Positions 61,110 to 63,772 of a stretch of DNA of 64,000 bases are shown piece by piece (position 1 is the first letter of the stretch; the number at the start of each line of letters is the position of its first letter). The position numbers were made by a program, and so were the translations under genes. The notes beneath the pieces were generated by a model. The model worked only from the letters and a program-made list of their open reading frames with translations, did not search any database and was not told the DNA's origin. Source of the DNA: Saccostrea cucullata (Eukaryota); assembly GCF_032062105.1 (NCBI RefSeq), contig NW_026918875.1, positions 62,001-126,000 of the forward strand, given 5' to 3'.

Positions 61110-63772
61110 AATTTTTGTGATTTGTTGCATTGTTTTGAAGTCTTACTAATCTTGTGCCAGTTTATACTTTCAGGGACTCGGAAAAGGAACAACGATGGAG
61201 GAACAAGGTCGACAAACAGAAGAAGACGAGATGACGAGTCCATTTCCCATCTCTATACACCAGACAACGGCCCAATGTGGTAAGTAACTTTTCGTGATTT
61301 GTTGCATTCTTTTGAAGTTTTACTAACATTGTGCCAGTTTTATACTTTCAGGAACTCGGAAGAGGAACAACGATGGAGGAGCAGGGTCGACCAACAGAGG
61401 AAGACGAGCTGACGAGTCCATTTCCCATCTCTATACAGCAGCCAACATGGCCCAAAGTGGTAAGTAACTTTTCGTGATTTGTTGCATTCTTTTGAAGTTT
61501 TACTAACATTGTGCCAGTTTTATACTTTCAGGAACTCGGAAGAGGAACAACGATGGAGGAGCAGGGTCGACCAACAGAGGAAGACGAGATGACAAGTCCA
61601 TTTCCCATCTCTATACAGCAGCCAACATGGCCCAATGTGGTAAGTAACTTTTCGTGATTTCTTGCATTCTTTTAAAGTCTTACTAACATTGTGCCAGTTT
61701 TATACTTTCAGGGACTGGGAAGAGGAACAACAATGGAGGAGCAGGGTCGACCAACAGAGGAAGACGAGATGACGAGTCCATTTCCCATCTCTATACAGCA
61801 GCCAACATGGCCCAAAGTGGTAAGTAACTTTTCGTGATTTGTTGCATTCTTTTGAAGTTTTACTAACATTGTGCCAGTTTTATACTTTCAGGGACTGGGA
61901 AGTGGAACAACGATGGAGGAGCAGGGTCGACCAACAGAGGAAGACGAGATGACGAGTCCATTTCCCATCTCTATACAGCAGACAACATGGCCCAAAGTGG
62001 TAAGTAACTTTTCGTGATTTGTTGCATTCTTTTGAAGTTTTACTAACATTGTGCCAGTTTTATACTTTCAGGGACTGGGAAGAGGAACAACGATGGAGGA
62101 GCAGGGTCGACCAACAGAGAAAGACGAGATGACGAGTCCATTTCCCATCTCTATACAGCAGCCAACATGGCCCAAAGTGGTAAGTAACTTTTCGTGATTT
62201 GTTGCATTCTTTTGAAGTTTTACTAACATTGTGCCAGTTTTATTCTTTCAGGAACTCGGAAGAGGAACAACGATGGAGGAGCAGGGTCGACCAACAGAGG
62301 AAGACGAGATGACAAGTCCATTTCCCATCTCTATACAGCAGCCAACATGGCCCAATGTGGTAAGTAACTTTTCGTGATTTCTTGCATTCTTTTAAAGTCT
62401 TACTAACATTGTGCCAGTTTTATACTTTCAGGGACTGGGAAGAGGAACAACAATGGAGGAGCAGGGTCGACCAACAGAGGAAGACGAGATGACGAGTCCA
62501 TTTCTCATCTCTATACAGCAGCCAACATGGCCCAAAGTTGTAAGTAACTTTTCGTGATTTGTTGCATTCTTTTGAAGTTTTACTAACATTGTGCCAGTTT
62601 TATACTTTCAGGGACTGGGAAGTGGAACAACGATGGAGGAGCAGGGTCGACCAACAGAGGAAGACGAGATGACGAGTCCATTTCCCATCTCTATACAGCA
62701 GACAACATGGCCCAAAGTGGTAAGTAACTTTTCGTGATTTGTTGCATTCTTTTGAAGTTTTACTAACATTGTGCCAGTTTTATACTTTCAGGGACTGGGA
62801 AGAGGAACAACGATGGAGGAGCAGGTTCGACCAACAGAGAAAGACGAGATGACGAGTCCATTTCCCATCTCTATACAGCAGCCAACATGGCCCAATGTGG
62901 TAAGTAACTTTTCGTGATTTGTTGCATTCTTTTGAAGTTTTACTAACATTGTGCCAGTTTTATACTTTCAGGGACTGGGAAGAGGAACAACGATGGAGGA
63001 GCAAGGTCGACCAACAGAGGAAGACGAGATGACGAGTCCATTTCCCATCTCTATACAGCAGCCAACATGGCCCAATGTGGTAAGTAACTTTTCGTGATTT
63101 CTTGCATTCTTTTAAAGTCTTACTAACATTGTGCCAGTTTTATACTTTCAGGGACTGGGAAGAGGAACAACGATGGAGGAGCAGGGTCGACCAACGGAGG
63201 AAGACGAGATGACGAGTCCATTTCTCATCTCTATACAGCAGCCAACATGGCCCAATGTGGTAAGTAACTTTTCGTGATTTGTTGCATTCTTTTGAAGTTT
63301 TACTAACATTGTGCCAGTTTTATACTTTCAGGGACTGGGAAGAGGAACAACGATGGAGGAGCAGGGTTGACCAACAGAGGAAGACGAGATGACGAGTCCA
63401 TTTCCCATCTCTATACAGCAGCCAACATGGCCCAAAGTGGTAAGTAACTTTTCGTGATTTGTTGCATTCTTTTGAAGTTTTACTAACATTTTGCCAGTTT
63501 TATACTTTCAGGGACTGGGAAGAGGAACAACGATGGAGGAGCAGGGTCGACCAACAGAGGAAGACGAGATGACGAGTCCATTTCCCATCTCTATACAGCA
63601 GACAACATGGCCCAAAGTGGTAAGTAACTTTTCCTGATTTCTTGCATTCTTTTAAAGTCTTACTAACATTGTGCCAGTTTTATACTTTCAGGGACTGGGA
63701 AGAGGAACAACAATGGAGGAGCAGGGTCGACCAACGGAGGAAGACGAGATGACGAGTCCATTTCTCATCTCT
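61110..63772 (+). repeat. 180-bp tandem array; each unit is a 108-nt exon-like plus 72-nt intron-like sequence (15 copies, last truncated)
   Basis: Exon starts at 61174, 61352, 61532 ... 63692. Each full unit has a GTAAGT donor, a TACTAAC branch point and a TTTCAG acceptor. Confidence 0.95.

What the first reader, a model, noticed from the sequence alone, without database searches (positions are those of the whole stretch)
61110..63772. A satellite that is a spliceable exon-intron cassette, with a peptide-precursor-like spliced frame
Seen: each 180-bp unit is TTTCAG|108-nt purine-rich exon|GTAAGT...TACTAAC...TTTCAG, a 72-nt intron with consensus donor, branch point and acceptor around an exon of 36 codons. 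In phase 1 the spliced array stays open from copy 2 onward: (G)T[G/R]KR-NNDGGAGSTNR-GRR-DDESISHLYTAANMAQ[S/C]. Phase 2 has TGA in every copy and phase 0 has a TGA in copy 13 (~63368). Established: G-KR and G-RR are prohormone convertase plus amidation signals. Inference: this may be a multi-copy peptide precursor whose dose scales by tandem exon amplification (NNDGGAGSTNR-amide and DDESISHLYTAANMAQSGT-amide), or a multi-exon repetitive lncRNA. Caveats: no signal-peptide exon was found, copy 1 is 106 nt (shifts frame), some copies lose KR or GRR, and variants between copies look neutral (CpG decay).
Basis: partly seen in the sequence, partly recalled or inferred. Interest (0 to 1): 0.85.

Follow-up and report, generated by a model that had tools for sequence, protein, structure and literature searches.

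The report
Amplified exon inside mobile oyster element
The repeat is one real, spliced exon copied head-to-tail 15 to about 68 times inside a large (at least 19 kb) element scattered over some 35 sites of an oyster-like genome; it changes like non-coding DNA, so it is probably a transposon-borne non-coding RNA rather than a peptide-hormone gene.

Summary
Observation confirmed: 14.8 copies of a 180-bp unit (108-nt exon, 72-nt intron with donor, branch point, acceptor). RNA contigs show exon-to-exon joints, so the family is spliced. The peptide-precursor reading is not supported. Only 13 of 55 exon indels keep frame, both amidation motifs survive in 100 of 242 copies, flanking exons stop all frames, and no signal peptide or protein relative was found. 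It sits in a co-linear unit of at least 19 kb at about 35 or more sites (haplotigs included). The unit's left end is a Helentron/HINE-type module, with unrelated flanks among the loci compared. The 72-nt intron is a by-product: 9 nt of the downstream donor joined to 63 nt of the upstream acceptor. Best reading: neutral whole-exon amplification in a non-coding transcript carried by a Helentron-like composite element; the right end was not reached. An unchecked scan note (s1-722004) describes a similar cassette elsewhere in this genome.

The parts
51755..52351 (+). Left module of the dispersed element, HINE/Helentron-type: 5' subterminal repeat with its complementary inverted repeat (hairpin 51755-51790), GTCC/GTCT microsatellite, 158-bp central repeats. 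The flank to the left is single-copy.
   Evidence: HINE layout from PMC7492417
52352..56563 (.). About 4.2-kb secondary insertion private to this locus (21-bp minisatellites); it replaces about 160 bp present in other copies
56564..56900 (+). tRNA-Ala(CGC)-like sequence (56566-56636) followed by a T-run, and the rest of the high-copy module; DNA depth falls about 90-fold after ~56900
57092..63772 (+). 6.7-kb segment duplicated in tandem at this locus; candidate 5' exon donors at 57361 and 58029 are predicted only
60686..60769 (+). Exon A (84 nt), stop codons in all three frames; paralogues A', A'', A''' lie downstream of the array in complete copies
60770..60871 (+). 102-nt GT..AG intron, spliced in RNA data
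   Evidence: joint 60768->60871: X3 depth 136, one X23 read, 0 in DNA run X1
60872..60947 (+). Exon B; acceptor shown by RNA, donor at 60948 weak and only predicted
61112..63772 (+). The 180-bp array: unit = last 63 nt of the upstream intron + 108-nt exon C + first 9 nt of the downstream intron
61174..61279 (+). Exon C copy 1 (106 nt; 2-nt deletion private to this locus)
61352..63619 (+). Exon C copies 2-14 (108 nt each, 61352+180k) separated by 72-nt introns
63692..63772 (+). Exon C copy 15, truncated, no donor
63778..64000 (+). Start of the second tandem copy (equals 57092-57314); beyond the window it carries a complete ~20-unit array and the downstream exons

Best explanation
The satellite is a whole internal exon (C) of a multi-exon, + strand transcript that was duplicated in tandem together with both its splice sites. 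The duplicated 180 bp are 63 nt of the upstream intron, the exon, and 9 nt of the downstream intron, so each junction makes a new chimeric 72-nt intron (shown by comparing array ends and the unamplified paralogue C'''). Unequal exchange or slippage then varied copy number from 15 to about 68 per locus (range shown, mechanism inferred). The spliceosome uses these sites (shown for the family, not for this locus). The transcript encodes no selected protein (neutral variation shown; absence of translation inferred). The whole unit, at least 19 kb, was copied to about 35 or more sites (shown). It most likely moved as a non-autonomous Helentron-type composite: rolling-circle copying starts at the HINE left end, reads through its terminator and is driven in trans by the genome's many intact RepHel genes (inferred, about 0.55 on its own).
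For: Dispersal: >=752 exon matches on >=16 contigs; upstream and downstream probes co-linear at about 35 sites, 81-100% identical. Left end: shared sequence starts at the HINE 5' end in the window, L021 and L029; flanks unrelated among the loci compared, window flank single-copy apart from one likely haplotig; hairpin and microsatellite as in Cg_HINE. >=150 Helitron_like_N matches in the genome, many in frames over 2,000 aa, none among those listed on a contig known to carry the element. End bypass is shown experimentally for Helraiser (PMC4778049). Splicing. Neutrality. Chimeric intron: 10 of 10 complete loci end the array with the same diverged exon and a 9-nt donor entering a unique intron; the upstream intron tail is homologous to the one before C'''.
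Against: Several copies have ragged or inverted left ends. HINE modules are so common that duplication breakpoints could fall on them by chance or by ectopic recombination. Phase 0 shows a weak synonymous excess (21 vs 16.3, P=0.06) and introns carry slightly fewer indels than exons (P=0.017, mostly one contig). Only 10 of about 35 loci were read, so a single selected master copy could be missed.
Confidence: 0.65

Rival explanations
1. Same non-coding, neutral exon amplification, but the unit spread by segmental duplication or ectopic recombination between the many HINE copies it contains, not by its own transposition.
For: The unit is studded with HINE-like repeats; left boundaries differ among loci (-21, -504, -527, -687, -740 from the tRNA-like piece); several contigs hold two or more copies; no right terminus seen.
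Against: Three copies begin at the same HINE 5' end (flanks unrelated where readable), and at least 35 copies keep the same HINE-to-cargo join. Many copies are 95-99% identical and lie on unrelated contigs in both orientations.
Confidence: 0.15
2. A functional repeated-exon RNA (FIRRE/RRD-like nuclear lncRNA, or a source of circular or small RNA) whose dose rises through exon amplification and through spread of the element.
For: Splice dinucleotides intact in 271 of 273 detected units and in nearly all downstream exons (unit detection itself needs near-intact sites). Array depth in the random-primed RNA run is about 1000x the upstream part, against about 150x in DNA; poly(A) runs are low. A joint that returns to the start of the same exon cannot be told from a back-splice.
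Against: Substitution rates in exon and intron are equal after base correction (57.3 expected, 55 seen). No fold signal in intron or exon (z +1.1 and +0.7), no Rfam hit. Copies are young, so intact sites need no selection. Summed contig depth is a poor expression measure.
Confidence: 0.12
3. A cytosolic repetitive protein is made from one frame (phase 0 or phase 1) at one or a few master loci, the rest being pseudogenes.
For: Two frames are open in the consensus exon; some arrays are open over 900-1000 codons in silico; ATGs in exon B can enter either frame if the predicted donor is used; weak synonymous excess in phase 0.
Against: The ORF would end in exon A' with several introns downstream, a decay substrate by the standard nonsense-mediated-decay rule. 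Old paralogous exons show no common codon-position bias and carry frameshifts. No phase 1 relative among 1.84 billion representatives, no phase 0 relative of similar length, no Pfam or Atlas hit.
Confidence: 0.06
4. Multi-copy amidated neuropeptide precursor.
For: G-KR and G-RR occur in phase 1 with spacing like a prohormone; that frame is open in copies 2-14 here.
Against: G-KR and G-RR both intact in only 100 of 242 copies; stops in this frame expanded to 4 copies in one array, 110-nt and 95-nt frameshifted exons expanded to 8 and 3 copies in others. Synonymous 15 vs 16.6 expected, nonsense 4 vs 2.3. No hydrophobic N-terminus from any ATG in exons A, B or C1 (max 9-residue hydropathy 0.91). 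Purine-rich exons yield K/R pairs by composition.
Confidence: 0.02

Closest known systems
Cg_HINE non-autonomous Helentrons of the Pacific oyster (PMC7492417)
   Same: Left module with subTIR, complementary IR and GTCY microsatellite, followed by central tandem repeats; dispersed satellite-like arrays carried by a mobile element.
   Different: Described HINEs are two short modules around an array. Here the left module is followed by at least 13 kb of non-array cargo with a spliced multi-exon transcript, and the main array is an exon-intron unit. The right module was not seen.
Helitron gene capture by 3' end bypass (Helraiser, PMC4778049; spliced maize Helitron transcripts, PMC4528327, abstract only)
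   Same: Multi-exon cargo spread in many copies, spliced, mostly drifting.
   Different: No source host gene identified; one cargo exon is amplified into a satellite; bypass is inferred, not shown.
'Mirage' minisatellites of amphioxus (PMC3087553)
   Same: Tandem copies of a gene segment that spans splice sites, variable copy number, divergent terminal copy.
   Different: Mirages copy one exon edge into an intron and, per that paper, do not alter splicing. Here the whole exon with both sites is copied and the copies are spliced together.
FIRRE lncRNA RRD exonic repeat (PMC4820808)
   Same: A transcript built largely of repeated exons.
   Different: RRD is a single-locus, non-adjacent local repeat with a tested nuclear-retention function, conserved between human and mouse. 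This unit is a perfect tandem array, multi-locus, with no function or conservation shown.
Multi-copy neuropeptide precursors such as FMRFamide or myomodulin (own knowledge)
   Same: Basic pairs with a preceding Gly at regular spacing in one frame.
   Different: No signal peptide, no purifying selection, cleavage and amidation motifs not maintained.

Membership tests
Amidated neuropeptide precursor | N-terminal signal peptide in frame | tested here: not met
   No hydrophobic N-terminus from ATGs in exons A, B or C1; exon A stops all frames. Unspliced upstream ATG peptides with hydrophobic stretches are not linked to the array. True 5' end unknown.
Amidated neuropeptide precursor | Conserved Gly-dibasic sites flanking repeated peptides | tested here: not met
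   Both motifs intact in 100 of 242 copies; RKR outnumbers GKR.
Amidated neuropeptide precursor | Purifying selection on the frame | tested here: not met
   Synonymous 15 vs 16.6, nonsense 4 vs 2.3; 13 of 55 indels in frame.
Amidated neuropeptide precursor | Mature peptides detected | not testable with these tools
   Needs peptidomics.
HINE / non-autonomous Helentron | Left module: subTIR, complementary IR, microsatellite | tested here: met
   51755-51837; hairpin -19.8 kcal/mol; definition.
HINE / non-autonomous Helentron | Right module: 3' subTIR and palindrome at a shared end | tested here: inconclusive
   No reverse subTIR (<=1 mismatch) in the window. A second module with the same subTIR starts about 7 kb past the array in L032, but its end lies beyond the DNA held.
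HINE / non-autonomous Helentron | Dispersed copies with unrelated flanks | tested here: met
   Left flanks unrelated among 8 loci with enough flank; window flank single-copy plus one likely haplotig.
HINE / non-autonomous Helentron | Insertion in a T-rich target without target duplication (empty site; own knowledge) | not tested
   Left junctions follow T-runs; right junction and empty alleles unavailable.
HINE / non-autonomous Helentron | No own RepHel; partner in trans | tested here: inconclusive
   No long ORF in the window part or in L018; 150 listed RepHel matches lie on other contigs; full element not read.
Mirage minisatellite | Tandem copies of one exon-intron boundary that are not spliced in | tested here: not met
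   Whole exon with both sites; copy-to-copy joints in RNA.
Mirtron or snoRNA host array | Intron folds as a hairpin or holds a known small RNA | tested here: not met
   Intron fold z +1.1; no Rfam match at E<=0.1.
Spliced lncRNA | Spliced transcript | tested here: met
   Four joints in RNA-run contigs; the two in the main table are 0 in the DNA run. Family level only.
Spliced lncRNA | Not translated | tested here: inconclusive
   No coding signature; no ribosome data.

The most novel reading that the evidence does not exclude
A Helentron-mobilised lncRNA gene family whose repeated exon is a working RNA module (FIRRE-like, or a circular or small-RNA source), its dose set both by satellite-style exon amplification and by transposition of the whole gene: a satellite DNA whose monomer is a spliced exon with a function.
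Probability: 0.12. Interest if true: 0.7.

Novelty: new variant of a known kind. Interest (0 to 1): 0.35.

Why it matters
It is a clear case of a transposon-dispersed satellite whose monomer is a complete, used exon, and of new minimal introns arising from one duplication that joins an old donor to an old acceptor. That links three known processes: exon-edge tandem duplication, Helitron cargo and oyster satellites carried by Helentrons. It also warns that such arrays give long spliced open frames with dibasic sites that mimic neuropeptide genes. No function is shown, so interest is moderate.

Tried and rejected
Protein relatives: phase 1 exon against 1.84 billion representatives, none; phase 0 exon plus read-through, none (only proteins of similar length are candidates); Pfam, none; Atlas, no usable hit. 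Selenoprotein reading of the TGAs in exon A: rejected, paralogues have TAA at one of these places. tRNA-targeting transposon (Dada-like): rejected, the tRNA-like piece lies inside the high-copy module, not at the boundary. Mirtron or snoRNA host: rejected. Coding relic in paralogous or downstream exons: no consistent codon bias; one pair (A vs A') has 4 of 4 changes at phase 1 third positions, another (C vs last C) favours phase 0, read as noise. Assembly artefact: rejected, since units carry distinct variants with higher-order patterns and independent DNA and RNA runs hold the sequence. One search placed exon B one base late; one search has the corrected frames.

Full report
Observation. The array spans window 61112-63772, period 180, 14.8 copies, 96% matches. 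It parses into a 106-nt first exon (61174-61279), thirteen 108-nt exons (61352+180k) and a cut fifteenth, separated by fourteen 72-nt introns. Donor, branch point (A at about -26) and acceptor are more than chance: 14 matches against 0.26 expected in the window, and 12 of 20,000 shuffled single units carry the same set.

It is not one locus. The window is G000:C1012:62001-126000 of a 1.17-Gb assembly. One exon finds at least 752 matches on at least 16 contigs. Probes upstream of the array and up to about 7 kb downstream hit the same contigs in the same order and orientation at about 35 sites. A young group is 93-100% identical, an older group 81-91%. These are lower bounds on matches, but the assembly holds likely haplotigs (C23231 repeats this locus), so the haploid number may be smaller. 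In ten contigs read, arrays run from about 15 to about 68 units. The shared unit is at least 19 kb in C13425 and at least 26 kb in C22507. In the window the array is broken in copy 15 and joined by 5 extra bases to a second copy of the sequence from 57092, a 6.7-kb tandem duplication; the second copy has a complete array and the downstream exons.

Left end. Shared sequence begins at about 51757 in the window, L021 and L029. It opens with a short terminal repeat paired to its complement (hairpin), a GTCC/GTCT microsatellite and 158-bp repeats, the layout of the left module of oyster HINE elements (PMC7492417). Flanks left of it are unrelated among the loci compared, and the window's flank is single-copy apart from one likely haplotig. 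The module includes a tRNA-Ala(CGC)-like piece and is itself high-copy (2,776 candidates; DNA depth drops about 90-fold after ~56900). Other copies have insertions or inversions here, and the window has a 4.2-kb insertion (52352-56563). The genome holds at least 150 Helitron RepHel matches, none of those listed on a contig known to carry the element. Bypass of the 3' terminator with capture of downstream DNA is shown for Helraiser (PMC4778049).

Origin of the unit. The cargo holds related exons in the order A, B, C-array, A', then A'', C'', A''', C''' and further exons, the distant paralogues 69-77% alike. The array begins 63 nt before the first acceptor. In all ten complete loci it ends with a diverged last exon whose donor continues 9 nt before entering a unique 92-nt intron. 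The intron tail before the unamplified C''' is homologous to the 63-nt piece. So one duplication of acceptor tail, exon and donor head created the 72-nt intron, and later copying multiplied it. This is the whole-exon form of the 'mirage' duplications of amphioxus (PMC3087553), which other notes of this scan report as common in this genome (not tested here).

Splicing. Reads and contigs were laid on 56540-62000. The DNA run X1 is about 97-99% identical in the unique part, so the runs come from the same or a very close species. RNA-run contigs (X3) show 60768->60871 (GT..AG, depth 136), 61458->61711 (GT..AG, depth 110), 61460->61354 with one G between (exactly an exon end joined to a GGGACT-type exon start, depth 545) and 61455->60686 with GGTT between (the diverged last exon joined to A', depth 130). 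The first two are 0 in the DNA run and have one raw poly(A) read each in X23. For the other two the lists are truncated, so absence from DNA is not shown. Limits: evidence is for the family, not this locus; contig depth is a poor measure of expression; poly(A) runs cover the array at only about 30-55x and show nothing at 56906-57637; the exon B donor was not among the listed joints; a joint returning to the same exon could be a back-splice.

Coding test. Among 242 full-length exons there are 61 distinct variants. With a context-matched null, phase 1 shows 15 synonymous (16.6 expected) and 4 nonsense (2.3 expected); phase 0 shows 21 synonymous (16.3 expected, P=0.06, one of three frames tested) and 3 nonsense (3.4 expected). 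Only 13 of 55 exon indels keep frame, and exon and intron substitution rates are equal after base correction. Broken variants are themselves amplified: a 110-nt exon in 8 copies, a 95-nt exon in 3, phase 1 stops in 4 copies of one array. G-KR and G-RR are both intact in 100 of 242 copies. Exons A and A' stop every frame; no ATG in A, B or C1 gives a hydrophobic N-terminus, and in the window the 2-nt deletion closes the entry from exon B into phase 1 after 77 codons. No protein relative was found. Exons were searched singly by reference; the joined model was not searched. The intron and exon have no fold signal and Rfam finds nothing.

Verdict. A real, spliced, neutrally evolving exon satellite inside a dispersed Helentron-like composite element. 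Shown: anatomy, dispersal, left end, chimeric origin of the intron, splicing at family level, lack of coding constraint in ten loci. Inferred: mode of transposition, absence of translation and of function. It works like Helitron cargo plus mirage-type duplication; it is not filed as a HINE because the right module was not seen, and it fails the tests for a neuropeptide precursor. New variant of a known kind, interest 0.35; a functional FIRRE-like RNA (PMC4820808) is not excluded (about 0.12).

Noticed in passing
window 51053-51470 (-): A single-copy gene appears to start about 300 bp left of the element, head to head with it; its second exon resembles DSCC1/DCC1 from memory, but Pfam and PDB searches did not confirm this.
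   Followed up: partly
window 56566-56636: tRNA-Ala(CGC)-like sequence with a T-run embedded in a high-copy HINE-type module; an inverted, diverged copy lies at L023:8524-8650. Possibly a Pol III-transcribed piece inside a Helentron family.
   Followed up: partly
window 52352-56563: Locus-specific insertion with several 21-bp and 15-bp minisatellites that give long low-complexity ORFs on both strands.
   Followed up: no
window 36850-45962 (-): EF-hand and KIAA1045-type RING exons (PHF24-like); the ORFs at 39674-39982 and 45621-45962 look like an internal duplicate pair.
   Followed up: partly
window 18523-20105 (-): CDC20/Fizzy WD40 exons (Pfam E 4e-13).
   Followed up: partly
window 201-1981: Head-to-head pair resembling TMEM68 (-) and aminopeptidase O (+) from memory; no Pfam hit on these exons.
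   Followed up: partly
L015:7617-7694: The element's left terminal module is inverted in this copy; L025 has a similar inversion next to the tRNA-like piece.
   Followed up: no
window 60566-61114: In DNA run X1 the exon A-B region has 60-100 times the summed contig depth of 57-59 kb, mostly from diverged sequence, hinting at a larger related family lacking the 5' part.
   Followed up: no
window 15122-17114, 22922-23380, 59100-60600: Further HINE-like elements with 146-165-bp central repeats.
   Followed up: no
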